Assembly: GCA_003427395.1 (NCBI GenBank)
Contig: BFEA01000041.1
Coordinates: 1,490,879-1,537,319 of the forward strand
Direction of reading: 5' to 3'
Origin: Chara braunii
Taxonomy: Eukaryota > Plantae > Charophyceae
Length of the DNA stretch: 46,441 nt
Part shown: positions 236-44,751 of the stretch, one piece after another
Layout of the letters: the number at the start of each line of letters is the position of its first letter
How positions within the stretch are numbered: the first letter of the stretch is position 1
Program-made: the position numbers and the translations under genes
The notes under the pieces: model-generated
Told to the model about the DNA's origin: nothing
What the model saw: the letters and a program-made list of their open reading frames with translations, nothing else
The model's database searches: none

Positions 236-3200
236 TTAATAATATCCTCCCGTGCCGGCGCTAGTCATCTGCGATTGGTAATGCACTGTGGCAGGCGCTG
301 CACCCGCCTGTTGCACCGCCTGGCCCCCATAGCTTGGTAATGCCCCCGTAGCGGTCGCTCCTTGGTAAGAGGTACTTACGCCACCTACCCCGCTGTGCAT
401 CGTATCCCTCATGGTGCTTCCTGTACTCACTCCATATCCTCCCCCTCCTCCTGACCCTCCATAGCCTCCATCATTACCATAATGTAGCGCAGAGTTGGAC
501 GTCGCTGCGCCGGTCGTCATCGCCGATGACATTCCCATCTGATGTCCGTGGCCGTACGACTGCGCGACGGCCCGCTCCTCGTAGATTGAGTAAGGCTGCG
601 CCGCACTCTGAGTGACTGTCTGCTGGGATCCCAACCCACTACTCTGCCCCACTTGACTTCCCATTCCTGTTCCTCCCATACCTCCCCCCATGCCTGCACC
701 CATACCTCCTCCCATTACTCCTCCCATCCCCGTTCCTCCTATGCCCCCGGCTCCTCCCATACCTCCTCCTCCCCCGATGCCACCTCCTCCGATACCCGTT
801 CCGCCTCCCATACCACCGCCTGTCATACCTGCTCCCATACCTCCTCCCATACCTCCGACCATTGATCCGCCTCCCATTCCTCCCGCAGTGGTCCCGCCGA
901 TTGCGCCAGCACCTAGACCTCCTCCCATACCTCCCGCCGCTCCCATTCCCCCTCCGCTTATACTGCCTCCCATGCCTCCCCCGCCCATGCTGCCTCCCAT
1001 CGCTCCTCCTCCCATTCCTCCTCCCATCCCTCCGGACATGCCCATTCCTCCCCCACCCATAGTACCTCCTGCCATGCCCCCTCCCATACCTCCTCCCATT
1101 CCAGTGGCTCCCCCCATCCCTCCACCCATGTTTCCTCCCATTCCAGTCCCTCCTCCTCCCATTCCTCCCATTGCACCGCCGACGCCGCCACCTACAGCAC
1201 CCATTGCCCCACCACCCATGCTCCCCCCTCCGCCCATCCCGACCTGCGCACTATTCGCAACCCCGTAGTGTCCCGCAGTCGGCGCGGCGGTCACTCCCCC
1301 TTGATTTGCCGCTCCTGTCTGGGAGTATCCTCCTCCCGCTCCCGTCTGGGAGTATCCCCCTCCAGCTCCTGTCTGGGAGTATCCTCCTCCCGCTCCTGTC
1401 TGGGAGTATGCCCCTCCCGCTCCTGTCTGGGAGTACCCTCCTCCCGCTCCTGTCTGGGAGTACCCTCCTCCCGCTCCTGTCTGGGAGTACCCTCCTCCCG
1501 CTCCTGTCTGGGAGTACCCTCCCGCTCCTGTCTGGGAGTACCCTCCCGCCCCTGTCTGCGAGTACCCTCCCGCCCCTCCTCCCATGTGCCCTCCGTGCAT
1601 CACCTGGCTCGCGCCCGCCGCCGGTCGCATGCTGACTTCCTCCGCATAGATCCCTCCACCCCCGCCTGCACTATACGTCGCAGCCCCACCTCCTCCTCCT
1701 CCCCCTCCCGTCCCTAACGGGTTCATCTGTCCTCCCATCCCCGCGTGCTCCACCTGGCCATCCATTCTCGGCCTCATTCGCACCTGCTGATCCATGTGCA
1801 ATCCATCGTCCATAATCATGTACGGACGCTTCGCGCCGGCAATACCTGCGGCTCCACGGCCATCGTCTGCTACGTATTCACGCCCGACGCCGGCGGCGCC
1901 ATAGCTCCCCCCACCTCCCACGGAAGCTTGCCCATAAGGCCCGGCGGCGGCTCGCTCCCCCATTCTTGCCTGGTAACCGGCACGCTCATAGCCTGCATTC
2001 GCATCATACCTGGAGCCTGTAGCAGAGGCATAGCCATCGCCCATACCTCTTCCAGCAGGGGTGGGAACGCCGCGACCGCCATAGCCGGAGGCAGCAACAG
2101 GCATCATGGCCGCAGCACGGGGTGCGGCTACTCCTCGACCTCGAACACCGACAGCTCCCGCTCCTCCATCTCCATAGCCTCCACCTCCTCCTCCCATGGC
2201 TCCACCGCCTGCCATATCGTACCCTCCGTCCATTCTCCCATCACCGTAGTCGTCGTATCGGCGGTCGGCTCGGACACCCACGAAATCGCCGGCTCCCGCG
2301 CCTCTGCCGCGGCCGCCCACAGCCGTCGTTCCGGTTGCGTAGACCAAGCCGCCGACGGCGGGTCCGCCCGTCTGTCTGCCGCCCGTGGCCCCGGGTGCAG
2401 CCGCGCCTCTCACTGGCGCGCCCCATTCTGCAGCCCCGCGCCCCCGGCCTCCCGCCGCCGCGTAGGGATCCCGTTCACCATACCCATCGCTCAATCCCCC
2501 TCGGGCGTCGTATCGCGTATACGCTGTCGTCCCGCCGCGCGTCACAACCGCCGCCGCCACCGCGCCTCCCCCTCTTCCGCCTCCNCCCCCACCAATCGGC
2601 CCCCCCCCGTAACTCGTTCCGCCCCCGCGATACGCACCCCCGCCTCCCATCCCGATACTTCCCCCTCCACCACCCCCTCCTTCTCGCGGTCTTGCAGGCT
2701 TAGGCTTCAGGAAATCCGTCTCCAAGCTCTTCATATCTTGATGCGAAAGCCTCTCCATGATCTTCTCCAGCGCGTCCGCCGCCGCCATCTGCTTCGCCTT
2801 TCCCTTCGCTTTCGCCTTCCCTTGCCCCCTTGTCACGGGTACATTCGCCGGTGGCCCTCCCAACAATGCCGTCACTTCGAACGTCTGTGCCCCTCCGGCC
2901 GCTTCCCCGTCCGGCGTCGCCTTCGTCGTGAAATTGACCTCTGCGTTTACCCTAGACGCGTACTCGTGAAGAAGACTCAGGGGTGTCTTGTTACTCGAGA
3001 CTTTGTCTCCTTTGCGAAGGCTTTCCACTAGTCGATGCACTCGAGAGCTCCTGTGTTTCGACAACTCAGCGCCAGTTTCGCTTTCGAATCCGCACTTCAC
3101 GCATTCAAACGCGCTGCTCTCCTTCCACTTGTTCTCCGCCTTCTCCTTGTCCCCCTCTCCTCCTGGCAAAGCTGCGGCATTGCCAGCCTTACCCTCGCCA

Positions 3201-3479
3201 TCACCATCGGTCATCTCAGTGTCTCCGTTCTTCTTATTAGCTCCGTCACCACCGGCGGCAGTAGGTCGAGACTTGCTTGCACTTCCTGGTCCACCTTTGT
3301 CCCCACCTTTCTCCTCTTCTGCTTCCTCCTGCACTGCCTTCTCCCGTATGACTCTCACGAACTCCGCCATGCTCGACTCTTCCTCCCCTGCTCCCCTTTC
3401 ACGACCTCCGCCGCCGCGTCCTCCGCGACTTCCTCTCGCCCTTCCAAACCGGCTGCTTCTCGCGCCACCCCCCCTTCCG

Positions 3480-3511
<32 letters not shown>

Positions 3512-4651
3512 NCCCCCACTCCTCCCCCGGCCTCCTCTTCCTCCTCTTCCCGTTCTACCTGATGCTAACCTCGCCGCTCCCCCTTTCGTCCGCACTGGCG
3601 GCCTTGCTAGCATTGCCTCCACCCTCAGCTTCTTATCGTCATCCCCTATATCTTTACCATTTATCGCCTCTATACACCGGAGCGCCGCATCTCTCTCCAC
3701 GTAATTCACGAACCCGAAGTCCTTCCTTTTAGCAGACGTTAGGTTCCCGGCCACAACCACCTTCTCCACCTCTCCCCATTGAGAGAAGAACTCCTTCACC
3801 TTGTCTTCCGACCACGTGGGTGGCATCCCATTGATGAACACCGACTTCACCTGCGACATTGTCTCCTCGCCCGGCTCGTTCAGCGGCTGCGCAAAAGCTG
3901 CTTTCACTGGCCTCTCCCCTCCCATCATTATATCCCCTTTCTGAAGCCTCTTGAGAGCTCTGGCTGCATCCTTCCTCGTCGGGAACTCCAAGAAAGCAAA
4001 CCCTCGGTTCATGCCCTCGTTCTGAGCGTCTTTCATGAGAGTTAAATCGTCTAAGTTCTCGATGCCGTTTTTGTCCAGAGCTTCTTTCACCATCTGCCTC
4101 GTCCATGACTTCCCTAGGTTACCCAAAAAGACGGTATGGTTGTCTTCGCAAGGCAGCACGCCGACAGTCCGGTTAAGTACGTCGACCTTGGCAAGGTCAG
4201 ACAAGGCGGCCTTGGCGCCGGCGACGGTGGCATAGCGAACGAAGCAGTAGCCCTTGTTGCGACCGGTATTAGGATTCTGAATCAGGCGAATCTCAGAAAT
4301 TTCACCAACCTTTTGGAAGACGGAACGAATATCATCTTCCGTGGCCCAGGGATCGAGACCGCCGACAAAGACTTCCGCTCGCTTACGCAGTTTCCTGTCG
4401 AGGGCAGACTCGGCAGACTCCCCTCCCCCACCTTCCCCTCCACCTGCACCACCACCTTCGCCTTCTGCCCGTTCTTTCGCAGCACCCATCTCGTCCCCGT
4501 ACTTCGCCATAGCCTCCTCCTCCTCACCATCCCCCATCCCATGTATATCTTCGTCTTGTTCATCATCCTGTCCATCAATATCCAAACCCTCCCCTCCGTC
4601 GCTGATCTCGATATCCTCCCCAATTCCATCCTCTGCCTTCACATACTCTTC

Positions 4652-4654
<3 letters not shown>
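236..4654 (-). CDS. hnRNP Q/R-like RNA-binding protein (3 RRMs + RGG + C2H2 zinc finger + dsRBD + Gly-rich low-complexity C-terminus), single exon, ~1472 aa
   Basis: Uninterrupted ORF; first ATG at 4654 (MEEYVK), the upstream extension is only microsatellite. Acidic N-terminus; RRM1 (EVFVGGL...KGYCFVRY, ~4150-4378); RRM2 (TVFLGNL...RGFAFLEF, ~3885-4138); RRM3 (SVFINGM...KDFGFVNY, ~3600-3850); C-x2-C-x12-H-x5-H finger (~3033-3110); dsRBD (KTPLSLLHEY...KGKAKQMAAADALEKI, ~2758-2990). The KRPY..MDD motif and terminal GGYY resemble the plant family. Two N bases in poly-C runs (2585, 3512). Confidence 0.9.
1311..1570 (-). repeat. Coding minisatellite: 10 copies of (G)GG/A-YSQTGA, 24-27 bp unit
   Basis: Repeated gctcctgtctgggagta(c/t)cctcc(tcc)c on + strand; translates to ten YSQTGA units. 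Confidence 0.95.

Positions 4655-4731
<77 letters not shown>
4655..4731. repeat. Compound (CT)n(CA)n microsatellite abutting the start codon
   Basis: Direct sequence; reads (TG)n(AG)n then ATG on the minus strand. Confidence 0.95.
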
Positions 4732-4732
<1 letters not shown>

Positions 4733-5310
4733 GCAACTGCACAAAGACGGCGACGGAAAATGATGGCCTCGCCCCCCCTTCCCCGTATCTCTTGCAAACA
4801 CACAGACGCCCTAATACGCCACGCCGCCGCCACAACAAAAGAAAAGGACGAGAGCTTAGCTTTCCTTGTTTATCCCGAGCAGCACAACCTCTCGCTTCCT
4901 CAGATAGGGCAGCAGAAGCGGCAGCACTGCGCAGTCACGGGCGCGCGTGGCTTGCCGTCGCCGACTGAGGTCCAGATTCCGCCTCTGGGTTCCACTGGTA
5001 CATATTTGACCTAGCCCTAGCGGGGGCAGCCAAATTCGCTGGCCAGGCGGGAAAACGAAAACGGCCTCCCCACCCACCCGGAAGATGAGCGAAAAAGGAC
5101 GCAATTGCCACTTATCCTCCTCGAATAGCAATAGCAAGATGGCCACCGTCTTCTCCCTGCGCTGCCACTCACATTTCCCAAGAAGTCACCTCTGCCACCG
5201 ACGCCGGTTGCAGAGCTCGCTTGGCGTATAGCTTGATATCCGACCTCTGCGTCGTGCATTACATTCCAACGCAAAGGGCGAAAACCCAAGAGCAGAGAAA
5301 GGAGGGAGCC

Positions 5311-8821: not shown

Positions 8822-11589
8822 TTATATTTTTTTTTTTTTCTTCTTTTGTTTTCACGGGCATGGGGAAGATCATTCTAACACTAGTATTATATATAACGTA
8901 CCTGACCACTAATCGCCTTGAAACAAGTTGAAGGTAGAGTCTGTGCTATGTAGAGATATATGAAGTGCTACTAGTATATGTATAATAAGCAACAACATGC
9001 TATGTAGTACGAGTCAAGCCGCGAATCAGGATCGACATCCCTCACAAAAGGAAGATGGTCCCTCAGGGTAACTGAGGTGCTCTAACGAGATTCATACCAC
9101 GATGGTTAAAAACGAAAAATGTAACCGAAATTTTATCATGATGGAGAACATCGAGCCCTTTAATCGGGCCACTACTCACTTTGAGATACTAAGATGCGTA
9201 TAATCGAGCCCTAAATCGATATTAATCAGTAAAAAAACTATTATCTATGTACAACAAACCAAAAATCAAGCAAACAAAGCTCACTGTGACGGCATAGCTA
9301 CATAAACCTACATGTCATGGCATTTCATTAAAACCCATAAAAGGGCGAGTCAAGTGACTCATTCAACTCCCATATAATCCACCACTTCCTCAATCACCCT
9401 AAGAGGTTGGCGATCCTTATGGATAATGGTTAGACCTTATAACCATCCTTTCATAAAGCATAGAGCCAACATTTTTCAATTCATATTAAAGCCGACATTA
9501 AAAAAATCATAACTCGTGAAAAGTCAAAATGTGGCTCAAAGCCCAACAACCACAATACCCAGAAAAAAATTAAGATATAAGCGTCATAATAGCAAACCAC
9601 TGGATGTCCTTATAAATGAGCAAAACACACGAACAACAAGCTCGAAGGTGAAGTAAAGGCTACCAATCTTCAATCAACCACCAACATATAGATCATTATG
9701 TGTGTATAGGCATGTGTATATGTACGCGTGTGCAGGAGTATGTGCAAGCATATGCATGCTTGAAGGTATGTGTGTTTGTGTATGCGCGTATATGTGCTTG
9801 CGTGACTGTGCATGAGTGCGTGCGCAAGATGCAGCCACTCCTATGATGCAAGGAATTATTGAGTGCGCCCAGGTCGCAGATCTCGATTGCAGGGCGGCTC
9901 CAACTCTCATATGTATATCAATGCATGAAAAACATAACCATGTATGGGAGCATTAATCTCTGTTGAATCAACAACCAGCACACATTGGTGACTTATCACT
10001 GTCCCATTGGTGTCCTCACAGATCGACATCAATAAAAACCAATCGAATGGCAAAGAGATGACCTACCACAATTTACATTTTTTTATGGTTGGCAAAAATC
10101 TACATTGGTTGGGTCCACTGATTGTTTGAACCATCAATACCTCCAAGATTTTTTATCCTAACTCGGATTTATGTTGCGCGTTGTCGTAGCAAACACCCTT
10201 ACAAGGGTGTTTCCTATTGTTTTTGAAGGACACCCTGGGTGCAACCTTGATAATACAAGCGCACTGATGGGACTAATCTCTTCCAAGGGCTCACCGCGGC
10301 AACCTCACCAATGGAATGCGTCCGAGCCAAGTACGAGCGAGTTAGAGAGGGTGTGAGGCACACATTATTGTGTAGCGCGGTAAAATGACTGTTAGTGATC
10401 GATAGTACCAGGTCGGCGAACGAAGGCCTCGTGCAAAGGCATGGGCAAGGGATAAGACTAACCAAACAGGTTGTGCACATGAAGCACGATTCATGGTACC
10501 AGGATAAAAATTGACAAGCGAACCCTCAACCAGTACAGGCTATACCCGAAGAAGGCTGGCGGCACGGGCCAAAGGCATAAGGCCCGGCTACCCACCTTCT
10601 GTAGGTTTTTTCTTTTTTTTGTTATAATTCTTTTTATTCTATAGTGTCTAGCTTTACTTCCTAAATCAACTCGACCTCTTGGTAGGGCCTATCGCGAAGG
10701 AGATACAAATATTTCTTTGCGCGTGCACGAAAAAATTGTGTTTTAACAACCCCATAGAAAGGCGCGACCTTTCAGCCCTCGCGTGGGGAAGTTGGGAGTT
10801 TTCAACAGTATATGAGATGTGCTCGACGACCAATGTACAAAATAGCTAGGGACTTAGACACGGACTACGTCGTGTGGCGGGCGTAAGTCTGGCCGGTAGG
10901 TCGAGGCGAAGGCTTGGTTATGTTGGTAAGTGCAGCCACGACACCGAATATGTTTTTATAAAATTTAGCGTCCACTTGGTTCAAACTTGGGCTTAGCCCT
11001 ATTGGTTACGGTACTGGAATTTCAAGCGATTGGTTTGGGGAACGAAGGTAGCAAGTGATTATGGAGTGAACGAGTGCGATCGACGTAGGCCGAGGGGTCG
11101 AGGGTCTTGTGGGACTAACCCCTTGGTTTTGTCGGACGGGCCTGGACGTGGGTCCGACTGGCAAGACGAAGGGGGGGCTAGTGGGTCCCCGTGCTTCTCC
11201 CCCTCCCCCTCAAGTTCCCCTAATTTTATTATTTTTATTTTTTATTTTATTTCTTATTTTACCTTGTTAGTAAGGCCTCATTTTTGGACCGGGCGCGATA
11301 CCGACGTCGGGACTGATGATGAAATCGACGGGCCTACCCCAGTTGGTACGTCCGAGGTTGTTGAATTACGGACGTTAGTCCAAATCCAGTCGGAACTTAC
11401 CTGAAGAAAACACATTCACGCCAATTACGTTGGAGGGACCGATAGCGAAGAAGTACTGCGAGAGAATGATGAAAAATAATTAAAAAAATAAATCAATAAG
11501 AGTGTTTGAAAATGCCAAGCGAGAAGTGGGTGAAGGAAAGTCGTGCACCCCGTTTGGGCAAGGTGGACCCCGACTTCGTTGTCGCCTCC

Positions 11590-12193
11590 TTATTAAACGT
11601 CGGGTGTCTGCCAGCATGGGCTCCTGTGACAGACAATGTAGTGGGGAGCGATTGAAACCTCCACTGGTGGTCGTCACGACAGTCAAAAGCTGGACGACGA
11701 CAATGGTGTCACCCCGCTTGTTGGATATGGGGTGTTCTGCGTGTTCAGGATGCTGACGAGATTCCTCCATCTTACCAGTCTTGAAACACGAACCGAGGGG
11801 GTTAATCTGCATGAGAGTTGTTGGATGTATAGCCCACAAGGCAAATGGAACTTGAGTGGCAAGGACCCCCTGAAGGTGCACTGTCTGCCAGCCATGATAT
11901 GCTATTGGAGGATTTGAGTGTGAGTAGGCCCGTAGTACCTGAAAGATGGTGAATTGTGCTTCGGCAAGGCAAGGCAAAAGGGAACTCAAGTGGGGGCTCG
12001 CAACGATACTGACGTGCGAATCGTTCGTCCGACCTGGGTAATGGGGCGAAAGACTACTCGAGTCGCCTAGTATTTGGTTCCCTCCGAACTGATATGCAAA
12101 TCGTTCGTCGGACTTGGGTATGAGGTTGAAAGACTAATTGAACCAAGTTAGTAGCTGGTGCCCCCTGAAGTTTCTCGCAGGCCAGTTGGAGCT
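11590..12193 (+). pseudogene. Degenerate fragment of nuclear LSU (25S/28S) rRNA, D2-D3 region, with internal ~80-bp tandem duplication
   Basis: Recognisable conserved LSU words in correct order: CAGGATGCTG, CAGTCTTGAAACACGAACCGAGG (cf. CCGTCTTGAAACACGGACCAAGG), CCTGAAAGATGGTGAATTGTGC, ACTGACGTGCGAATCGTTCGTC, GGGGCGAAAGACTA, TAGTAGCTGG, GAAGTTTCTCGCAGG...GGAGCT. Many substitutions; no flanking rDNA recognised. Left boundary approximate. Confidence 0.85.
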
Positions 12194-19989: not shown

Positions 19990-20470
19990 TCTATTTAGCC
20001 AAAAAAAAAAAAAAAATCGAAAAAGATGGTGGTGTCAAAACTTGTTTGCCCACGTAGTAATTTGTTTTTTCTCACTTTCCACTTTTTGTTTTTCCTTCCT
20101 TTCTGAGCATGAAAAAAAATATTATTTTTTTCAAACCTTATTTGTAGGTTCTCAATTATGTAAGATACACATATATAAATTTTCATGAAATTTGTCAAAG
20201 CCAAAAACAATGAAAAATTGACAAAGATGGCGGTATCAAAAACGTGCTCGCCCACTTAATAATTTTATTATCATTTTTTATTATTATTTTTTTACTTATA
20301 TTTGTTATTTTTTCAAATTTGGTAAAGAATTTGAATGTAACGTTGAAGCAAATATTATTCAATTTATTCTTCTGCATAACTTTTTTTTTTGTCTGCGAAC
20401 GAACGAACGCGCCGAGAGAGGGTCCCGAATGTTCAGGCGTTCGACTCATCCCGAATATCGGTCGATTGAG
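19990..20470 (-). mobile_element. MITE family C fragment (hAT-like)
   Basis: Reverse-complement similarity to 21551-21950; AAGATGGCGGTGTCAAAA motifs; subterminal CCGAACG repeats. Confidence 0.6.
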
Positions 20471-20906
20471 GCAAAGTGGCGCAGTATTTGCAACTGTGAA
20501 TCCAAAGGCCCTAACTGAAATGTAATGCGCATAATCCGCAGAAAACCAATCATTGTGACAAGTTTTTCTAAAAAATTGTACAACACTATTTATATCTACA
20601 TAGCAACGAGTTCACGTTCGAAGGTGAACGCGAACATGTTCGCCTGAACACGAACAAGCGCCCCAAAACCTCCGAACGCGAACATAAAAAATATTTAAAA
20701 AAAAATAAAAATCTCAAAAAAATATGAAAAAAATATAAGTTACGTAGAATAACAATACAAGCAAATTTTTCCTTGGAGTCATGTTCAAATTCGTAGCCAA
20801 TCATGAGTAAAAATTTAAAAACCAAATATATATATATATATATATCGTTACAAACAGAACTGTCCGATAAACCGTAGGCAGAGAGAGAGAAGAGGACAAT
20901 AAACAA

Positions 20907-20974
20907 GGGGCTGTTTCGTCGGAGTTTCACCGACTCATCAGGAGGCTGAACCCTCAACGGTCTACAAAATCCCC
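20907..20974 (-). ncRNA. Type III hammerhead ribozyme, copy 1
   Basis: Minus strand: ...AGACCGUU^GAGG-GUUCAG-CCUC-CUGAUGA-GUCGG-UGAAACU-CCGAC-GAAAC-AG...; intact CUGAUGA and GAAAC boxes, paired stems I and II; stem III partly lost. Confidence 0.85.
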
Positions 20975-21318
20975 TCACTGATTACACTGTAAATGATAAT
21001 CTACCTTAACCAAAATCAAAGTAGACTATCACTCACCCACACCAAATGAAAAACTCTACAGACTGTCGGTTCACACCCCATCACAAGCCAGCAAAACATC
21101 CACGAAACAAAGAAAGGTCTGTCACAGCCAAAAAATACACTCCAGATACGTCGCTGGCACAAGAGGCACAACATGGCCGCCTAGTAACGGCCCCGACCGC
21201 TGCCGCTCGACCTGACCGAAAAAACCGTAGCAGGAAGCTAGCGAAGTCGTAGCATATATCGTCACAATCAGAACTGCCCGGTAAACCGTAGGCAGAGAGA
21301 GAAGAGGACAACATACGA

Positions 21319-21396
21319 GGGGCTATGACAAACTGTTTCGTCGAAGTTTCACCGACTCATCAGGAGGTTGAACCCTCAATAATCTGCAGAATCCCC
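21319..21396 (-). ncRNA. Type III hammerhead ribozyme, copy 2
   Basis: Minus strand: ...GCAGAUUAUU^GAGG-GUUCAA-CCUC-CUGAUGA-GUCGG-UGAAACU-UCGAC-GAAAC-AGUUUGU...; core intact; A.C mismatch next to the cleavage triplet. Confidence 0.8.
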
Positions 21397-21550
21397 TCAC
21401 TGATTACACTGTAAATGATAATCTACCTTATATATATATTTTACGGAAAAAAATTATGTTCGCTCGAACATGTTCGCGAGAACGCGCTCGTGCGAGCGTG
21501 AAGGGGTGTGTGCGAAAACGTTTGCCGTGCTACGCATATGTATATATATG

Positions 21551-21652
21551 CACGTTAATCAACGATCGGGACGGGCCGAACGGCCAAACCCGAACGCCCG
21601 AACGTTTGGGACCCCCTCTCGACGCGTTCAGACGTTCAGCCGAACGCGGAAC

Positions 21653-21701
<49 letters not shown>

Positions 21702-21950
21702 AAAAATGTTGAAAACAAAATATGTCATGCAAAAGAATAAACTAAACAACATTTGCCTTAACAGTACAGCCAAATTCCTTACCAAATTTGAAATAAAAAT
21801 CAAATATAAAAAATAAATAATATTAATGAAAATAAGCAAAAATAAAACGAGAATGAAATTATTGCGTGGGCGAGCAAGTTTTTGACACCGCCATCTTTGG
21901 CGATTTTTCATTCCCACAAAACTAAACGCTAAACACTTCATTGGTAATTA
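21551..21950 (+). mobile_element. MITE family C fragment (hAT-like)
   Basis: Degenerate terminus, CCGAACG subterminal repeats, poly-A, shared AT-rich core, TTTTGACACCGCCATCTT motif. Confidence 0.6.
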
Positions 21951-22125: not shown

Positions 22126-22742
22126 ACTATTAAGCTTATAAAGCAATATCCGTATTAAATTAAAAAAAAAAAAAATGTTAAAAAAAAAACTTAGGTAATA
22201 AAATATTATGTGTGCCAAGGTCACTAACCCATACGTACGGAGGTTCCAAGATCGACCTCCGTATGTACGAGCGTTCGGGGTTCGAAACCGACGACATTGG
22301 GCCCCCGCAAAAAAAATAAATTTAGGGCTTAAAACTGAGTTTTTTTTAGGGCTTAATTTTGAGGTCATTTTGCTAAGCCAAAAAACGAACAAAATCGCCA
22401 AAGATGGCGGTGTCAAAAAATGCTCGCACAATCACAATTGTTTTTTTTCATTTTTTACTTTTGTTTTCACTTTATTGCGGGGCCTAAGAAATTGAATTAT
22501 TTTTTGAAACAGTTATCTAATATGAAGTACACATCTATATATTTTTAGGGTATTTCGCTGTGTCAAAAAACAATGAAAAATCGCCAAAGATAGCGGTGTC
22601 GAAAACGTGCTCGTTCACTTGCTAATTTTTTAAAATTTTTAATATTATTTAAAAAAAAAAACTAACCTATATTATCTCTCAAAATACCTACTTACATCTT
22701 AGCAACTGCGAATGTCAGCATCTTAGGATATTTATCTGAGAC

Positions 22743-23014
22743 CTAGGCTACCAGCCGGGCCGCCCGGGTCACCCTATTTTCCCGGGCGGCCCGACCGTGC
22801 AAGGATTAAGAAAGGCCCCAACCAAAAAAAAAAAAAAAAAAAAAAAAATCAAAAAAAACTATGTTATGCAGAAAAACAAATTCAACAACTTTTGCCTCAA
22901 GGTCACATCGAAATTCGTTACGAAATTTAAAATAAAAATTACAATTCGAAAACTATTTTTTATATTTTTTTAGCTCGGCCGGACAAGTGGACCCCGACCA
23001 CTCTGGTAACCTCG
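22743..23014 (+). mobile_element. hAT-like MITE family B
   Basis: TIRs CTAGGCTACCAG / CTGGTAACCTCG; perfect 8-bp TSD TCTGAGAC (22735-22742, 23015-23022). Confidence 0.9.
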
Positions 23015-23266: not shown

Positions 23267-25219
23267 TTTATTTCAAATTTGGTAAGGAATTTGAATGTCA
23301 TACTCAAGCAAATGTTGTTTACTTTATTTTTCTTCATAACATATCATTTTTTTAAATTTTTGTATTGTTTCATTTAATTTATTTCTTTATTTTTTCCACG
23401 TTCGGCCCTAAGGCGTCCCTCACGTTCGGGCGTTCGACCAATCCCGAACGCCGGTTACCCTGACTTGTGCTAAATTGAGAGTTAAAATTTTGAGCATCCC
23501 GCCTTTAAGAATTTTTGTTATGATTTCCAACATAAGAGATTATGTACCATATAAGAATGTAGATAATTATCTAACATGTTAGCACCGACGTTAGCATTAA
23601 GTGATGCATGGGGAAAAACTGACAGAGGATTGTTAAGTAGTGATAGTAATAATAGTATAGCTCGCCAAATATATGGTGTCTAAATAGTTGAAGCGATGTG
23701 CCGGATTACGGCTCAAAGGCGAGCACGAGGTAGAACTCCAAAAAAACATTATCGTCTCCCTCCCTACAGCTAGTCTCAGTGGCAAAAAAACAGTGCTCCT
23801 CGATTGACGACGGGAACAATTAACGAATCAGTTGTTGTCTCTGCTATGTACGAGATACGTTAACGACCACGAGTTTTTTTTACGTTGAAACTTTTATTCA
23901 AAAAGTAAATCCACATAGCGATTGCCAACGCAGAAATACGACACTAAAAACACGAGCGCTGAAGGTTTCAATGACGAAGGTGCAACCTCTTTCACAAGTG
24001 TCGTGTAGAACTTCCCCGTCCAACAAAAAAAAAAAAAATCATATTAAACATTGGTGTTCCCAGGAAGAGGGGAAAACTTCAATAACTTTCTGCTTTAGTT
24101 TTTTTTGGAGCAAAAGCATGAAAACATTAAAAATATTATGAATGGAACGTACTATCATTATTACTTTATGAGCGCTAATCATCCTTCATGTACAACCATA
24201 AACTAATTGAATGGGAAGATGATAGCGTATCTTCATTTTTTGTATTAAACTCTACTTGGTGGATGCTCACAATCATTTTATTTTATTTTTTCAACATTCG
24301 TGATGTTTCTATAGTTTCCTTCATAATCAAAATTGAAAATAAAAATTTATTCATGTGGGGTACATGCTACAATATAAATGAAATAATATAAACATATATT
24401 GTAATGATTCCCTAATATTTCGCCCTTTAAGAAATTATGGTGCAAATAAAATGTATATAGCTACTGCTGCCAGACATAACCCTAGTAATAGTTTGGTAGT
24501 TCAAGAACAAACAAACTCAAACATAGAAACTATAGTTCGAGAAAAAGTAGTCGTTTAAAGCCAAGAGTGGTTAAGAAGAACCCCCACTTACAAATTTTGA
24601 CTAACGGGTCCAACTTGAATTTAGGGTTAAAGGTTCTTTTTCATTTGCTTATGTGCTGAATTTAGTATTATTCAGGCCATTGTAATTTTTTCTGTTGAGA
24701 TTTCTAAGATCTCTGAAGTTTAATGAAAGTGCATTTTTGTCTCCTTGTTTTATAGTTTGTATAGTTTTTTTTTCAATTTTATTTAAGTAGTTCCTACGGT
24801 CTCCACTCTGTGAATTGGTGGCAAATTTGGTCAAAATAACGTTTGGTTTTTGTTATACATGGCACGAGGAGTTATCTGAAACTTGAGGCCTTCATTCTTC
24901 GCCTCTCTTTAGTCACCACTTCTGGCCCTATTTCTCTTAAACCACTAGTCCCCCCTCAAGCAGAAATTCGGGGGCGACAGGTAACAAAGGTTTGAGAGGG
25001 TTACCAGTGGCAGAGTGAAAAAAAATATGAGTGGCAAAAATGAAAAATGCATCCAATTGCCTCTGCGATTTATTTTGTGGCCTACCAAGTTTTTTTATTT
25101 TTTTAAATATTTTTCATAACAAGAGACGACGTCTTAATGTACGGACCCTTCAATTTTTTATAATTTTTTTTTGTTTTAAAGTTGTGTTCTTCTCTAAATT
25201 TCACCTCACACTACCTACC

Positions 25220-25449: not shown

Positions 25450-25481
<32 letters not shown>

Positions 25482-25671
25482 AAAATTTGGTAAGGAATTT
25501 TGATGTAACCCTGAAGCAAAAGTTATTCAGTTTATTTTGCTGCATAATATGTTTTTTTTTTGCATTGTTTTGATTTTTATTTATTTTTTTGGTTAGGACT
25601 TTCCCTAACCCTTGCACGACGAAGCCGCCCAGGAAAATAGGGTGACCCGAGTGGCCTGACTGGTAACCTAG
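25409..25671 (-). mobile_element. hAT-like MITE family B (opposite orientation)
   Basis: TIRs CTAGGCTACCAG / CTGGTAACCTAG; TSD ACGCAACA / ATGCAACA (7/8). Confidence 0.9.
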
Positions 25672-26770: not shown

Positions 26771-27081
26771 CTGTGTAGCACGGCGAACGTGTTCGCACGT
26801 TCGCGCGAACAACTAGCGAACATGTTCAAGCAAACACAATTTTTTTTCAAAAAAAAAATATATATATACATATATATATTTTTTAATTTTTTATTTGTTA
26901 GGAATTTCAACATGATTCCAAGGCAAAAATTGCTTGTATTATTGTTTTACATAACATATATTTTTCCCAGATTTGTCTGAGAACGTTTTTTATTTTATTT
27001 TAATATTTTCTATTTTCGCGTGCGGAGGGTTTCCGACTCTTGTTCGCGTTCGCCTCCGAACGCGAACACAGTGCTACGTAG
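26771..27081 (+). mobile_element. hAT-like MITE family A
   Basis: TIRs CTGTGTAGCAC / GTGCTACGTAG; TSD GTTTAATC / GTTTGGTC (6/8); GTTCGC/GCGAAC subterminal repeats; internal (AT)n. Confidence 0.85.
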
Positions 27082-29659: not shown

Positions 29660-29903
29660 AAAACTCTCCTAAGTTAACAGGAAACAACTAATCTCAACTC
29701 TATGCGGGGAGCAACACCCAAGCTTCTAACACCAGGCGCAAGCTGGAATCGCTCCCCAGCTAGCCAAGAGGCCAAAGCCAATTATCTCCGCTGGAGAGTC
29801 CGAAGCGCATCACATGAGGCTGTGGGGATAGAATGGACGACGTAGGGAATAAAACCTATAACCTTCCGCAAACCACTTCCGTGCTCAAACCAACTGAGCT
29901 AGC
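29660..29903 (-). mobile_element. tRNA-derived SINE, copy 2 (5' end runs into the assembly gap)
   Basis: Minus strand GCTAGCTCAGTTGGTTTGAGCAC...GGTTTTATTCC; shares CCGAAGCGCATCACATG and GTGCTCAAACCAACTGAG with copy 1. Confidence 0.75.
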
Positions 29904-30089
29904 NNNNNNNNNNNNNNNNNNNNNNNNNNNNNNNNNNNNNNNNNNNNNNNNNNNNNNNNNNNNNNNNNNNNNNNNNNNNNNNNNNNNNNNNNNNNNNNNN
30001 NNNNNNNNNNNNNNNNNNNNNNNNNNNNNNNNNNNNNNNNNNNNNNNNNNNNNNNNNNNNNNNNNNNNNNNNNNNNNNNNNNNNNNNNN
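29904..30089. other. Assembly gap (N run)
   Basis: Run of N. Confidence 1.
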
Positions 30090-30272
30090 TCCCCTCTCCC
30101 CCTTCCCCTCCTCCCCTTCCCCTCCCCCCCAAAAAAGACACATTTTAAATCTATTGTACAATGCTGAAGGGCTTAAAGTCTTGAAAGTCTACTCCCTATA
30201 TAGGGTCTGCGACATTGATGAAACAATAAATATGTCAATTCTTAGTGATTTTCTGTGCTAAATGTTCTTAAC

Positions 30273-35922: not shown

Positions 35923-38606
35923 GAAAAAACATCGACAACGGGTGTAGAAGGTGCTGATATGAGCAGCCACCCATTCTACAGATCCTGCTATTAGATGGCT
36001 CTGTTGAGTCTGCTCCATTTGCGGGGAGTGGCACCTGCTGGAAACCAGGTAGGATGATGGTTGTTTAGTGTACAATGGACGATGAAGGCGTTGGGCACGA
36101 TTCAAGAAAAATGTGGTCGTTTATTCAGGTACACAGTGAGAGAAAGTTCTTCCTAGAGCGATTTTGTGAATGTTGCAGCTTGAGAATAACATTCAATAAC
36201 TAGTGTATTCATCAGAAACTTTTTTCATCTGCTAACTATAAAATCTAGACATTTATCTCTCTCTGAGTTGTACGTGATCTTGAGAATAACTCCTTTGGAC
36301 CATTTTTTGATTTAGGCGTGTCATCTTTTCTTTTTTTGGGTCTTTTTTTTAAAGGTTTTATTTTTTTAATCTTCTTTTCTTTTCATGTAAAAGCCCAGGT
36401 TGTTGTAGAGGCTAGCCACCAGGCATATATGACAGTCCCTTCAGCAGTTGGCCATTTGATCATCCAGATGATTTTCTATACAGCCCACCTATGAGACTCC
36501 CTCCCACCCTTACTCGTCATTACTGTCGTGGCGCTAGGCGTTGCGTAGGGGCCATGCTAAACTTCTCTGTATTGTTTCGATTTTACAGGTTCAAATTTCA
36601 AACAAAACGAGTACAATGGTCCTGGTGTTTCAGGAAACCAGAGGAGATCATTTTGGAGAACACCTTGGCGCAACACAGGCAGCTAATACATTTGGGGGAA
36701 GATGGTCGCATGAACTTGGCCTCTACGATTGCACCACGCTCACAGATAAGCACAATTACAGTCACCCGTGCAGTGGTTAAGGCGATTCCTAGATCAAATT
36801 TCTAAATATGGGCATGTGTCCTGCAGGCAGACCACATGCATGTGCAAACAGCATACAACCACGGAGCCTTATTCACACACACAGAATGCCACAGTTCCTT
36901 GATTCGGGCACTTACCTTGGCTTTCACAAACAAGAAGGTTAGGCGGGTGTAGGGCCGTTGTCTGCGAGCGCAGCTTCAAAGTTCAATTTCAGCTTCATGT
37001 TCACCAAATCCTGCCGATACAGTGCTCCTCCTCCCTCTTCTCTACAGCACCTGATCCTGGACAATCATTTCCATCGCTTGTAAGATTTTCCTGGTGGCAC
37101 AGCCACTTCTTCGGATTCCTATTCGACAACCTTTTCAGACCAGACCACACCATGCTTGCAAACGCCACCGAGGTCAGCAAGCACCATGTAACACTTGGCC
37201 ATGCATGCAATCCACCGCAATCACCCTCCCTTGTATCTTCTCCAGTTCCCTAGCGATATCTTCTTCACACGGGCTCAAGCCTCCAGGGTACGTACCGCTT
37301 CCCTCTCTGCAAGAGAGACCATGATAACTCGTCAGCATCATTCCAACCACCAAGAAGCAGTAATTCATACCTCATCTTCCTTCATAATTGGTTGCTTCTA
37401 AACTCAGTGAAGTGCACCTTCTGTCACTCATATGCAAGGCATGAGGCCCTCGGCCAAGGTCGGAAAGGGCCTGCGCCCGCTGGAAACTGTCTGCGCCCGC
37501 TGGAAACTGTCTGCGACCGCCGTAAGTGAAGGCGGGACTGAAAAATTCGATAGACCTATTTTGAGGGGATGCGAGCAGAAAGGGCCTTGTGGGTTGGTTG
37601 CTGCGCGCAGCATGTAAAGGGCCTCGTGGGTTGGTTGCTGCACGCAGCATGTCCAACCGGCCGGTAGGCCCGATCGGTTGAAGCTGCTGCGCCCAGCAAA
37701 GATGCTGAGGCCCACCGTACTTACAGTTGAGCCCCAGGCACATTCTGGAAGGGCCCTGGATGCGCTATTGGGACAGATGCTGAGCGTCCAGAGCCTGCCT
37801 CACCCAGACAACCAATGCACAAAAGGAAGTGAGGGCACTCATTTCTCAACATTCTGGCTGGCTGGATGGCGGCAGCACTGCTGGAGTACTGGCTTGCTGC
37901 ACGAAAGTCGGGCACAGTGCGGAAGGGTGCTGGCGTGGCCCGGGGAAGAAACTGTGTGGGTGCAGCCTGAGCGCAGCAGCCATAGCCGGGCTGCTGGTGC
38001 CATAGCCTGGGAGGTTGAGCGGAGGTCCTTGGGGGAGGGACAGTGTGGGGAAGATGAGGGATGAGTGATGCATGTTGAGTGGGCCGCTACAGGCGGAGTC
38101 TTCATTCGCCCTCGGGCTGCTGAACTTCATGATGAAGACCTGTTGTTGTCATTTTAGAGTCTAAGGTTGATAGGTGCTCTCTGATGGTAATCTGGGAGCG
38201 GAGCACCATTTGGGAGAGCGACACTGTGCACATTGATGTTGGCGGCGAGAAGAGGGCATTCATTGTCAATCGACTTCGGTGTTCTGCTCTTCCTTATTTG
38301 GTGTATTTCGTGGTGCAATCTGCTTTCAGTTTGTGCACATGGTTATCTGGATTTCTATGGAATGATGCAATTTGGCTCCCGTCATTCGCATTGCTCATTT
38401 TCCATGCACATAACTCATAACTCAATGCATGCTGACACAAGGACTACTCAATTGAGCTCCGGGCCTAATTGTGGTCATATCTGGTCCTAATTGCAGTCAG
38501 ATACGTCCAGGAAACCCGGAATGTGTCATGGGCGTCCGACTTTGAAGGAAAAGCAAAAGAAAGTCTGTCACTCCATTACACACTGTTGCCATGTGAAATG
38601 AACTTC

Positions 38607-44095: not shown

Positions 44096-44413
44096 AAAAT
44101 TGTAGGGAACTTCACTACAATCGCAGTGCCACTACATAAAAAAAGAAACTTCGTCGCTACAGGACAAATAATGCACCTCATTGTTTCAAAAGTTGAAGCA
44201 AGCATTGATAGAGTACCCAGTCTTGAAAATTGCATACCCTTTCCTACTATTCGTCATGATAGGTACTCAGTATGGGATAGGGGTAGAACTACAACAGGAT
44301 GAAAAAAAAAATGTCGCCCTATAGAGTTAATATGATCCGAAAGCGAAGTAGCAGACTCGACCCACAAAAAGGAGCTATACACATTGTAAGGCGCATTGCA
44401 AACTTGGTGAAAT

Positions 44414-44751
44414 CGACGTAGCACCGTGTTCGCGTTCGGAGGCGAACGCGAACATGTTCGCCCGAACGCGAACAAGCGCCAAAAACCCTCCGAACGCGAA
44501 CATAAAAAATATTAAATAATAAAAAAAAAAGTTCTCGAAAAAATCTGAAAAAAATGTATGTTATGTAAAATAATAATATAAGCAACTTTTGCAGTGGAGT
44601 CGTGTTCAAATTCGTAGCCAATCACGAGTTAAAAATCAAAAACCAAACAATAAATTTCTTCTTTTTTTTTTTTACGAAAAAAAAATTATGTTCGCCCGAA
44701 CATATTCGCGCGAACGTGAAGGGGCGCAAACACGTTCGCCGTGCTACGCAG
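44414..44751 (-). mobile_element. hAT-like MITE family A inserted in the gypsy pol remnant
   Basis: TIRs CGACGTAGCAC / GTGCTACGCAG; perfect 8-bp TSD GGTGAAAT (44406-44413, 44752-44759). Confidence 0.9.

What the first reader, a model, noticed from the sequence alone, without database searches (positions are those of the whole stretch)
20840..21430. Retrozyme-like element: two type III hammerhead ribozymes 422 nt apart in direct repeats
Seen: two ~170-bp direct repeats. On the minus strand each folds as NUH^-stem I (GAGG/CCUC, 6-nt loop)-CUGAUGA-stem II (GUCGG/CCGAC, 7-nt loop)-GAAAC-open stem III. Predicted cleavage is at 20956/20955 and 21378/21377, releasing a 422-nt monomer, so the insert is a ~1.4-mer. 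There is no convincing ORF, TG..CA termini, tRNA primer-binding site or polypurine tract. Established: plant retrozymes carry type III hammerheads in LTRs and accumulate as circular RNAs; Penelope-like elements and metazoan non-LTR retrozymes carry (mostly type I) hammerheads in partial-tandem repeats. Inference: a type III ribozyme in a short non-LTR partial-tandem unit, in a probable charophyte, mixes the two architectures and may be an undescribed family of self-cleaving, circRNA-forming mobile RNAs.
Basis: partly seen in the sequence, partly recalled or inferred. Interest (0 to 1): 0.92.

Follow-up and report, generated by a model that had tools for sequence, protein, structure and literature searches.

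The report
Decayed hammerhead retroelement copies in (TA)n
The two hammerhead ribozyme motifs are real, but they are worn-out copies of a very abundant short retroelement that inserts into (TA)n repeats in what is probably the alga Chara braunii, most likely the non-coding tail of the Penelope-like elements already described there.

Summary
Two direct repeats (20846-21008 and 21260-21430, minus strand) each carry a type III hammerhead. Rfam Hammerhead_3 scores are 35.1 and 33.4 bits, below the 48.5 gathering score, with whole-window E-values of 6e-4 and 2e-3.

The 585-nt block is a discrete insertion into a (TA)n tract of another repeat, shown by two empty-site paralogs in the window.

Public reads show an enormous, transcribed family. 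Its majority sequence folds as a canonical hammerhead with a 9-bp stem III and probably a GUC site. Both window copies are eroded:
- Copy A has AUU and an A.C mismatch at 16.2/15.2.
- Copy B has lost the 3' strand of stem III through a 10-nt deletion.

The 422-nt spacing is not a family unit. In other copies the tail ends at ...GTGACG followed by (TA)n. Many copies are 5'-truncated, some starting at or near the cleavage site. The 245-nt middle behaves as a separate module.

There are no LTR features, no ORF and no evidence of circles. The best reading is stacked, decayed copies of a Penelope-like (Chlamys) derived, hammerhead-bearing non-autonomous retroelement. Such elements were reported for C. 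braunii in 2021.

The scan has noted this family many times on other DNA of the same genome. I could not test the sequence link to an RT-encoding element.

The parts
21260..21430 (-). Hammerhead unit A (171 nt). It starts at TAAGGTAG directly after (TA)n and ends at ...GTGACG.
   Evidence: Repeat families D5, D6 and D8; alignment A1; sharp rise in read and contig depth at 21424.
21330..21385 (-). Type III hammerhead motif A. Predicted cleavage after U21378 at an AUU site, with an A.C mismatch at 16.2/15.2 and a G.U closing pair in stem II.
   Evidence: Rfam RF00008 at 33.4 bits, below the 48.5 gathering score. The hammerhead fold is -10.8 kcal/mol against a minimum-energy fold of -14.0.
21254..21259 (.). 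(TA)3 spacer between the 3' end of unit A and the middle module.
   Evidence: Sequence. Loose ends 'before 21254' are (TA)n in 597 and 1122 RNA reads.
21009..21253 (-). Middle module (245 nt). It is non-coding and as abundant in DNA as the hammerhead units. It has no significant similarity to them and has its own boundaries.
   Evidence: No ORF. Local alignment scores fall within the shuffle range. Listed contig pieces are confined to 21011/21012-21224, and several continue with unmatched sequence beyond 21012.
20846..21008 (-). Hammerhead unit B (163 nt). It starts at the same TAAGGTAG as unit A and ends at ...GTAACG followed by (TA)n.
   Evidence: depth boundary at 20852.
20908..20963 (-). 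Type III hammerhead motif B. Predicted cleavage after U20956 at a GUU site. A 10-nt deletion after GAAACAG removes the 3' strand of stem III.
   Evidence: Rfam RF00008 at 35.1 bits, below the 48.5 gathering score. Alignment A1 shows the 10-nt gap. The hammerhead fold is -5.3 kcal/mol against a minimum-energy fold of -16.6.
20826..20845 (.). (TA)n microsatellite at the 3' side of the insertion, part of the target.
   Evidence: Sequence; empty-site alignment A2.
21431..21441 (.). (TA)n microsatellite at the 5' side of the insertion, part of the target.
   Evidence: Sequence; empty-site alignment A2.
20594..20825 (+). Left part of the host repeat (GAACG-rich) that was interrupted by the insertion.
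   Evidence: 84.7% identity to 44412-44647 and 78% to 26858-27051 in reverse complement.
21442..21536 (+). Right part of the host repeat.
   Evidence: Matches 44670-44750 and 26772-26864 in reverse complement.
44412..44750 (+). Empty-site paralog of the host repeat. Only about 23 nt of T/A-rich sequence lies where the 585-nt block sits in the finding.

Best explanation
The locus is a head-to-tail stack of old, decayed non-coding retroelement copies in one (TA)n microsatellite: hammerhead unit A, a short (TA)3 spacer, an unrelated abundant middle module, then hammerhead unit B. The hammerhead unit belongs to an extremely abundant, transcribed family of what is probably the Chara braunii genome. 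Its majority sequence encodes a canonical type III hammerhead about 118 nt upstream of a fixed 3' terminus (...GTGACG). That terminus always abuts (TA)n. Inferred mechanism: the element RNA is copied by target-primed reverse transcription at nicked (TA)n, using the RT and endonuclease of an autonomous Penelope-like (Chlamys-type) element whose 3' region it shares. The ribozyme trims the template RNA upstream, so many copies begin at or just after the cleavage site. Incomplete synthesis gives other 5' truncations, and repeated hits or template switches in the same microsatellite give stacks. In this locus both ribozymes have mutated away from the active consensus. The 422-nt interval is an accident of stacking, not a functional monomer. 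Shown here: the repeats, the motifs, the insertion, the family abundance, the transcription, the family-level canonical ribozyme, the fixed 3' end in (TA)n and the 5' truncation. Inferred: the Penelope-like partner, the reverse-transcription mechanism and in vivo cleavage.
For: Discrete insertion into (TA)n: two paralogs of the flanking repeat lack the block. Abundance: summed contig depth is 4e5-1.2e6 across 20852-21423, against 2e3-8e3 in the repeated flanks and 2.5 at 21512-21555. Fixed 3' end: loose ends before 21254 read (TA)n in 597 and 1122 RNA reads. 5' truncation: TA-rich loose ends lie behind 21349 and 21367. DNA-contig joints run from 20947, 20950, 20954 and 20955 to 21254 with T, ATAT or ATATAT between them. 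These are copies starting at or within 8 nt of the cleavage site, directly after another copy's 3' end. Family ribozyme: majority letters restore G16.2 (21380), C16.4 (21382), U16.3 (20959) and the stem II C-G pair (21344). Loose-end consensus reads ..CAGACUGUC|GA.. upstream and GAAACAG-UCUGUCACAG downstream. The edited sequence has the canonical hammerhead as its minimum-energy fold at -24.3 kcal/mol. Window copies are eroded. Transcripts are mostly of one polarity, and RNA depth falls several-fold upstream of the cleavage site while DNA depth does not. Literature: Chlamys-2_cBra has a canonical 3' hammerhead. PLE-X families in C. braunii also have hammerheads. Copy number is very high in C. 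braunii. Non-autonomous Chlamys elements in Chlamydomonas form head-to-tail insertions and share 3' ends with autonomous families. Insertion is biased toward microsatellites (PMC8557442). Vertebrate non-LTR retrozymes have been argued to be PLE derivatives (bioRxiv 10.64898/2026.07.22.740005).
Against: No RT- or GIY-YIG-encoding copy carrying this tail could be fetched, so the Penelope-like link rests on literature and architecture. Published PLE hammerheads are type I (PMC4209133), whereas this one is type III. Craig et al. report (CA)n and (C)n bias for Chlamys and (TA)n for Naiads, so the (TA)n preference does not match exactly. Units A and B start at the same nucleotide, which suggests a defined 5' end (a SINE-like unit) rather than random truncation of a long element. 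The middle module has the same DNA abundance as the hammerhead unit and abuts unit B without (TA)n, so the two could belong to one composite element. The module boundaries rest on a small listed subset of contig pieces. C17 in the family rests on loose-end consensus with only 0.45-0.55 agreement. The read tool found no pile-up of molecule ends at the cleavage sites. The species name comes from earlier scan notes, and I did not verify it.
Confidence: 0.68

Rival explanations
1. The block is a single-event partial tandem (pseudo-LTR) of one element. The middle plus unit B is a 5'-truncated copy of a longer Penelope-like or non-autonomous element. Unit A is the upstream partial copy made in the same retrotransposition by template jumping, as is typical of PLEs.
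For: PLE insertions are typically partial tandems with an upstream truncated copy (PMC8557442). The middle and the hammerhead unit have similar DNA abundance and the same transcript polarity. The middle abuts unit B with no (TA)n between them.
Against: A (TA)3 spacer lies between unit A and the middle. In the family the tail is followed by (TA)n, not by the middle. Listed contig pieces stop at 21011/21012 and several continue into sequence unlike unit B. A and B differ by 10-15% and by a 10-nt indel. A starts exactly at the middle/B boundary, which would be a coincidence for a random truncation.
Confidence: 0.2
2. The block is a genuine retrozyme-like 1.4-mer. Transcripts are cut at both hammerheads, releasing a 422-nt RNA that is ligated into a circle and serves as the template for new copies.
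For: Two co-oriented hammerhead motifs lie in direct repeats. The family is transcribed. Tandem hammerhead repeats and circular RNAs are known in plants and animals (PMC4918200, PMC7229834).
Against: Both motifs fall below the Rfam gathering score and have defective stem III. The A-to-middle junction is not conserved in the family. Other first-reader notes on the same genome report spacings of 143 and 318 nt (unchecked), so there is no fixed unit. No circle-specific joints were seen. There are no LTR features, no PBS, and the TSD is not discernible.
Confidence: 0.07
3. The motifs are chance matches to the hammerhead consensus in a duplicated sequence.
For: Scores are below the gathering threshold. 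The two matches are not independent because they lie in repeats. Neither copy folds as a hammerhead at minimum energy.
Against: The full 11-nt core plus two closed helices is present in both copies. The family majority restores a perfect stem III and the minimum-energy hammerhead fold. Retro-copies begin at the predicted cleavage site.
Confidence: 0.02

Closest known systems
Chlamys-type Penelope-like elements of Chara braunii with a 3' hammerhead (Chlamys-2_cBra; PLE-X families), and non-autonomous Chlamys derivatives such as MRC1 of Chlamydomonas (Craig et al. 2021, PMC8557442)
   Same: Probably the same host. Shared features are a hammerhead near the 3' end, very high copy number, frequent 5' truncation, head-to-tail or partial-tandem insertions and insertion into microsatellites. 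Non-coding derivatives share only the 3' end with autonomous elements.
   Different: No RT or GIY-YIG ORF lies nearby, and sequence identity to the published consensus was not testable here. The target here is (TA)n, whereas the paper names (CA)n and (C)n for Chlamys. The short unit seems to have a defined 5' end. The ribozyme topology is type III.
Metazoan non-LTR retrozymes (Cervera & de la Pena 2020, PMC7229834; PLE-derived according to bioRxiv 10.64898/2026.07.22.740005)
   Same: Short non-coding hammerhead-bearing repeats of 150-450 bp with no LTR, PBS or PPT, a likely PLE origin, and high copy number and expression.
   Different: The metazoan elements are true tandem arrays of one unit with type I hammerheads that often act as dimers, and they yield circular RNAs. 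Here the hammerhead is type III with a long open stem III, the copies are dispersed or stacked with (TA)n between them, there is no conserved tandem junction, and no circles are shown.
Plant LTR retrozymes (Cervera et al. 2016, PMC4918200)
   Same: Type III hammerheads in two direct repeats flanking a non-coding centre, within the green lineage.
   Different: Retrozymes have LTRs of 300-400 bp, 4-bp TSDs, a tRNA-Met PBS and a PPT borrowed from Ty3-gypsy elements, and they form 600-1000-nt circles. None of these features is present here.
Hammerhead ribozyme type III, Rfam RF00008
   Same: The core is CUGAUGA...GAAA, helices I and II are loop-closed and helix III is open. Loop 2 (UGAAACU) matches the family consensus. 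An identical stem II and loop 2 occurs in a phage-like metagenomic hammerhead scoring 53.6 bits.
   Different: The window copies score 33-35 bits, below the gathering score, and helix I has only 4 bp. Activity is untested.

Membership tests
Hammerhead ribozyme type III (RF00008) | Conserved core CUGANGA ... GAAA with helices I and II closed by loops and helix III open | tested here: met
   Both copies align full-length to the model (positions 1-54) with an intact core.
Hammerhead ribozyme type III (RF00008) | Score at or above Rfam's gathering threshold (48.5 bits) | tested here: not met
   35.1 and 33.4 bits; absent from the gathering-level scan.
Hammerhead ribozyme type III (RF00008) | NUH cleavage triplet with 16.2 paired to 15.2 and a stable helix III | tested here: not met
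   Copy A has AUU with an A.C mismatch at 16.2/15.2. Copy B has GUU with only 2 contiguous helix III pairs after a 10-nt deletion. The family-majority sequence meets the feature with a probable GUC and 9 bp.
Hammerhead ribozyme type III (RF00008) | Self-cleavage at the predicted site | not testable with these tools
   Only indirect hints: retro-copies start at 20954/20955 and RNA depth drops upstream of 21378, but there is no pile-up of read ends.
Plant LTR retrozyme | LTRs of about 300-400 bp carrying the hammerhead and flanked by 4-bp TSDs | tested here: not met
   The repeats are 163 and 171 nt. The insertion lies in (TA)n and no TSD can be discerned.
Plant LTR retrozyme | tRNA-Met primer-binding site and polypurine tract next to the LTRs | tested here: not met
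   No PBS-like match within 2 mismatches near the element. No purine run is visible at the repeat borders on reading the sequence.
Plant LTR retrozyme / non-LTR retrozyme | Monomer-length circular RNA | tested here: inconclusive
   Oligo-dT RNA reads show no circle-specific joints. The 'goes back' joints fit cross-mapping between the two repeats. These libraries are poorly suited to detecting circles.
Non-LTR retrozyme (metazoan type) | Tandem array of one unit with a conserved unit-to-unit junction | tested here: not met
   The family tail is followed by (TA)n, not by the middle. No listed contig piece crosses 21253/21254 or 21008-21012.
Non-LTR retrozyme (metazoan type) | Type I hammerhead | tested here: not met
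   The topology is type III.
Penelope-like element (Chlamys) tail or non-autonomous derivative | Sequence identity of the 3' region to an RT/GIY-YIG-encoding element | not testable with these tools
   There is no PLE ORF in the window. Protein look-ups meant to reach other loci of this genome found nothing. The paper's supplementary consensus files are not held.
Penelope-like element (Chlamys) tail or non-autonomous derivative | 5' truncation, head-to-tail or partial-tandem copies, microsatellite target, hammerhead in the repeated 3' part | tested here: met
   compared with the description in PMC8557442.

The most novel reading that the evidence does not exclude
The roughly 165-175-nt hammerhead unit is not just random debris of a long Penelope-like element. 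It would be a discrete SINE-like retroelement with a defined 5' end (TAAGGTAG...), a stand-alone type III hammerhead with a long helix III (unlike the type I or minimal motifs of published PLEs) and strict (TA)n targeting. It would be amplified to perhaps 1e4-1e5 copies and abundantly transcribed in a charophyte. That would make it a ribozyme-processed non-autonomous family, not explicitly described, that links plant type III retrozyme ribozymes to PLE-type mobilisation.
Probability: 0.3. Interest if true: 0.55.

Novelty: new member of a known kind. Interest (0 to 1): 0.28.

Why it matters
The finding shows that the streptophyte alga's genome is saturated with a hammerhead-bearing short retroelement whose consensus ribozyme is canonical type III. 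This topology is otherwise associated with plant LTR retrozymes and viroid-like RNAs, whereas published Penelope-like elements carry type I motifs. If the unit is confirmed as a PLE-mobilised family, it would be a useful data point for the proposed evolutionary path from Penelope-like elements to retrozymes to infectious circular RNAs. It would also be a natural case in which retro-copy 5' ends record ribozyme cleavage in vivo. The particular locus itself is decayed and has no special significance.

Tried and rejected
- Rfam at the gathering threshold gave no hammerhead. Hits appear only in E-value mode.
- The metagenome scan with the 29-nt core pattern returned two phage-like contigs (L001, L002). 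They carry an unrelated but bona fide type III hammerhead of 53.6 bits with the same stem II and loop 2, and no copies of the algal family.
- Scans of genome contigs and viral contigs with the conserved 33-nt leader gave 0 hits.
- I tried to reach other loci of this genome through proteins. One query was the spurious ORF through hammerhead B. The other was a degenerate gypsy RT ORF at 43446-43763. Both found nothing, so more family copies, covariation statistics and the link to an RT-encoding element could not be obtained.
- Local alignment of the middle module against the hammerhead units, in both orientations, scored within the shuffle range.
- No other copy of either module exists in the window.
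- Sequence look-up in the scan's own notes was blank.
- The supplementary consensus files of Craig et al. 2021 are not held.
- The 'goes back 415' and 'skips 425' joints were considered as circle or tandem evidence. I rejected them because they fit family variants cross-mapping between repeats A and B.

Full report
**1. Observation**

On the minus strand the region contains two direct repeats, unit A (21260-21430) and unit B (20846-21008). They are separated by a (TA)3 spacer (21254-21259) and a 245-nt middle (21009-21253). The hammerhead-containing part is 93% identical over 98 nt with an offset of 422. The tails are 90-92% identical with offsets of 412-414. The offsets differ because A has 10 extra nt after GAAACAG and B has 2 extra nt in a CT run. 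BLAST gives 85.5% identity over 179 nt.

Each repeat has GAGG/CCUC with a 6-nt loop, CUGAUGA, GUCGG-UGAAACU-(C/U)CGAC and GAAAC. The 29-nt core pattern occurs twice against 0 expected. Rfam Hammerhead_3 aligns full-length to 20908-20963 (35.1 bits) and 21330-21385 (33.4 bits). E-values are 1.7e-5 and 5.3e-5 on 1.3 kb and 6e-4 and 1.9e-3 on the whole window. Both scores are below the curated gathering score of 48.5, so the default scan lists neither. There is no ORF and no PBS-like site.

**2. Quality of the two ribozymes**

- Copy A has the triplet AUU, an A.C mismatch at the 16.2/15.2 pair next to the core, and a G.U closing pair in stem II.
- Copy B has GUU. The 10-nt deletion removes the 3' strand of helix III, leaving two contiguous pairs.

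The hammerhead fold costs -10.8 kcal/mol against a minimum-energy fold of -14.0 for A, and -5.3 against -16.6 for B. Efficient cleavage at both sites of this locus is therefore doubtful. That conclusion is an inference from established hammerhead rules, not a test.

**3. It is a discrete insertion**

The flanks (20594-20826 and 21439-21536) belong to another repeat. That repeat has two further copies in the window, at 44412-44750 and 26772-27051 in reverse complement. Where the 585-nt block sits, those paralogs have only a short T/A-rich or (TA)n stretch. The block is bordered by (TA)n on both sides, so no target-site duplication can be read.

**4. Family-level evidence from public reads**

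I laid two raw oligo-dT RNA runs, one DNA contig set and one further contig set of the same organism on 20500-21800, with a threshold of 88% likeness.

(a) Abundance. Summed contig depth is 4e5-1.2e6 across 20852-21423. It is 2e3-8e3 in the flanks, which are themselves repeated, and 2.5 at 21512-21555. The boundaries are sharp and the family is enormous.

(b) Fixed 3' end. The commonest loose end lies 'before 21254' (597 and 1122 RNA reads) and reads (TA)n. In other copies the tail therefore ends at ...GTGACG and is followed by (TA)n, not by the middle.

(c) 5' truncation. TA-rich loose ends lie 'behind' 21349 and 21367. DNA-contig joints run from 20947, 20950, 20954 and 20955 to 21254 with T, ATAT or ATATAT between them. 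These show head-to-tail stacks in which the downstream copy starts at or within 8 nt of the predicted cleavage site (20955 is the first nucleotide after cleavage).

(d) Module boundaries. None of the listed contig pieces crosses 21253/21254 or 21008-21012. Five pieces begin at 21011/21012, and four of them carry 40-123 further letters that do not match unit B. Units A and B both begin at the same TAAGGTAG. I read this as evidence that the hammerhead unit has a defined 5' end and that the middle is a separate module. This rests on a small listed subset of pieces and is only moderately supported.

(e) Family ribozyme. Majority letters differ from the window exactly where the window ribozymes are defective:
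- Sense 21380 A>G restores G16.2.
- Sense 21382 U>C gives C16.4.
- Sense 20959 C>U restores U16.3.
- Sense 21344 U>C restores the C-G pair of stem II.

Loose-end consensus reads ..CAGACUGUC|GA.. or ..CAGAUUGUC|GAGG.. upstream of the site and GAAACAG-UCUGUCACAG downstream. I edited copy A at seven such positions. The result has the canonical hammerhead as its minimum-energy fold: helix III 9 bp, helix I 4 bp, helix II 5 bp, at -24.3 kcal/mol, with 16 of 500 shuffles as low. C at position 17 rests only on loose-end consensus with 0.45-0.55 agreement.

(f) Transcription. RNA reads are strongly biased to one mate orientation over the tail and the middle (4-8:1), which indicates transcripts mostly of one polarity. 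RNA depth falls 10-12-fold between 21336-21379 and 21380-21423, while DNA depth does not fall. After pooling the two identical leaders the depletion is about 6-fold. This fits cleavage with loss of the 5' fragment. It also fits preferential transcription of 5'-truncated copies. The tool found no pile-up of molecule ends, so in vivo cleavage is not shown.

(g) Circles. No joints are specific for circles. The 'goes back 415' and 'skips 425' joints fit family variants cross-mapping between A and B.

**5. Interpretation**

The 422-nt interval is not a conserved unit. The locus is a stack of decayed copies in one microsatellite. The following features together match Penelope-like elements and their non-autonomous derivatives:
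- a fixed 3' end in (TA)n;
- variable 5' ends;
- head-to-tail stacks;
- absence of coding capacity;
- a ribozyme near the 3' end;
- huge copy number.

Craig et al. 2021 (PMC8557442) report three Chlamys types for Chara braunii. One has a canonical 3' hammerhead (Chlamys-2_cBra), and another group (PLE-X) also has canonical hammerheads. They report very high copy numbers in C. braunii and microsatellite insertion bias. In Chlamydomonas they describe non-autonomous Chlamys elements that share 3' ends with autonomous families and form multicopy head-to-tail insertions. A 2026 preprint argues that animal non-LTR retrozymes are PLE derivatives.

Earlier notes of this scan name the genome as C. braunii, and I did not verify this independently. 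One follow-up on another piece (s1-527501) reached the same reading, including 'two very abundant non-coding retroelements' in (TA)n. The scan holds 67 first-reader notes on hammerheads in this genome, including spacings of 143 and 318 nt (unchecked). That again argues against a fixed monomer.

**6. What remains open**

I could not fetch any RT-encoding copy or further family copies, and the paper's consensus files are not held. The link to a particular autonomous element is therefore an inference. Three details do not fit the published description exactly. The topology is type III, whereas published PLE hammerheads are type I or minimal (PMC4209133). The target is (TA)n, whereas Craig et al. 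name (CA)n and (C)n for Chlamys and (TA)n for Naiads. The unit appears to have a defined 5' end. Together these leave room for a distinct SINE-like ribozyme family; I give this reading a probability of 0.3.

**7. Comparison with known families**

- Plant LTR retrozymes (PMC4918200): LTR size, TSD, PBS and PPT are not met.
- Metazoan non-LTR retrozymes (PMC7229834): the tandem unit junction and the type I motif are not met.
- Hammerhead type III: the architecture is met, but the curated score and helix III are not met by these two copies. The family majority meets them.

**8. Verdict**

It holds decayed copies of an abundant hammerhead retroelement in a system already described for this alga. 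Interest is 0.28. Novelty class: new member of a known kind.

Noticed in passing
L001:8190-8244 (-) and L002:3441-3495 (+): Two near-identical metagenomic contigs (Ga0114902_1000484, Ga0114903_1000585) with phage-like small ORFs carry an intergenic type III hammerhead scoring 53.6 bits, above the gathering score. Its stem II and loop 2 (GUCGG-UGAAACU-CCGAC) are identical to those of the algal family. This is probably convergence on the consensus loop, not shared ancestry.
   Followed up: partly
window 20594-20826 + 21439-21650; 44412-44750; 26772-27051: A GAACG/GTTCG-rich repeat family has three copies in the window. Each has an internal A-rich or (TA)n stretch that serves as the landing site. 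The copy hosting the finding ends in a roughly 47-nt poly(A) run at 21650-21698, which suggests a poly(A)-tailed retroposon on the + strand.
   Followed up: partly
window 20209-20393 and 21711-21912: A long imperfect inverted repeat (about 185-200 nt arms, 75-80% complementary) brackets the whole region. Related pieces lie at 22377-22650, 22850-22955, 23267-23395 and 25480-25590, including a perfect 29-nt inverted pair at 21879-21907 / 22391-22419.
   Followed up: no
window 21009-21253 (-): The middle module is as abundant in DNA contigs as the hammerhead unit. It is transcribed in the same polarity, is non-coding, and has no detectable similarity to the unit. Its identity is unknown: a second (TA)n-targeting family, or the body of a composite element.
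   Followed up: partly
window 11375-12077 (+): Diverged fragments of large-subunit rRNA (116 and 41 bits) lie in non-rDNA context. Earlier scan notes attribute such pieces to retrotransposon LTRs in this genome.
   Followed up: no
window 36541-36609 (-): A U6 snRNA 5' part (model positions 1-68 of 105) scores 44.8 bits, just above the gathering score of 44, and has a mispaired 5' stem. It is probably a retro-copy or pseudogene.
   Followed up: no
window 43446-43766 (+): A 106-aa ORF has Ty3/gypsy-type reverse-transcriptase motifs by eye (..PVRFVPKK....YHPIEV....LGLPNAPMTF..). It looks like a degenerate fragment. A protein search limited to similar lengths found nothing.
   Followed up: partly
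window 236-4801 (-): A GC-rich (63%) long ORF has three RRM domains (Pfam RRM_1, E 2.9e-44). It stands out from the AT-rich, repeat-filled rest of the window.
   Followed up: no
window about 29900-30100: An assembly gap (a run of N, seen as X in ORF translations).
   Followed up: no
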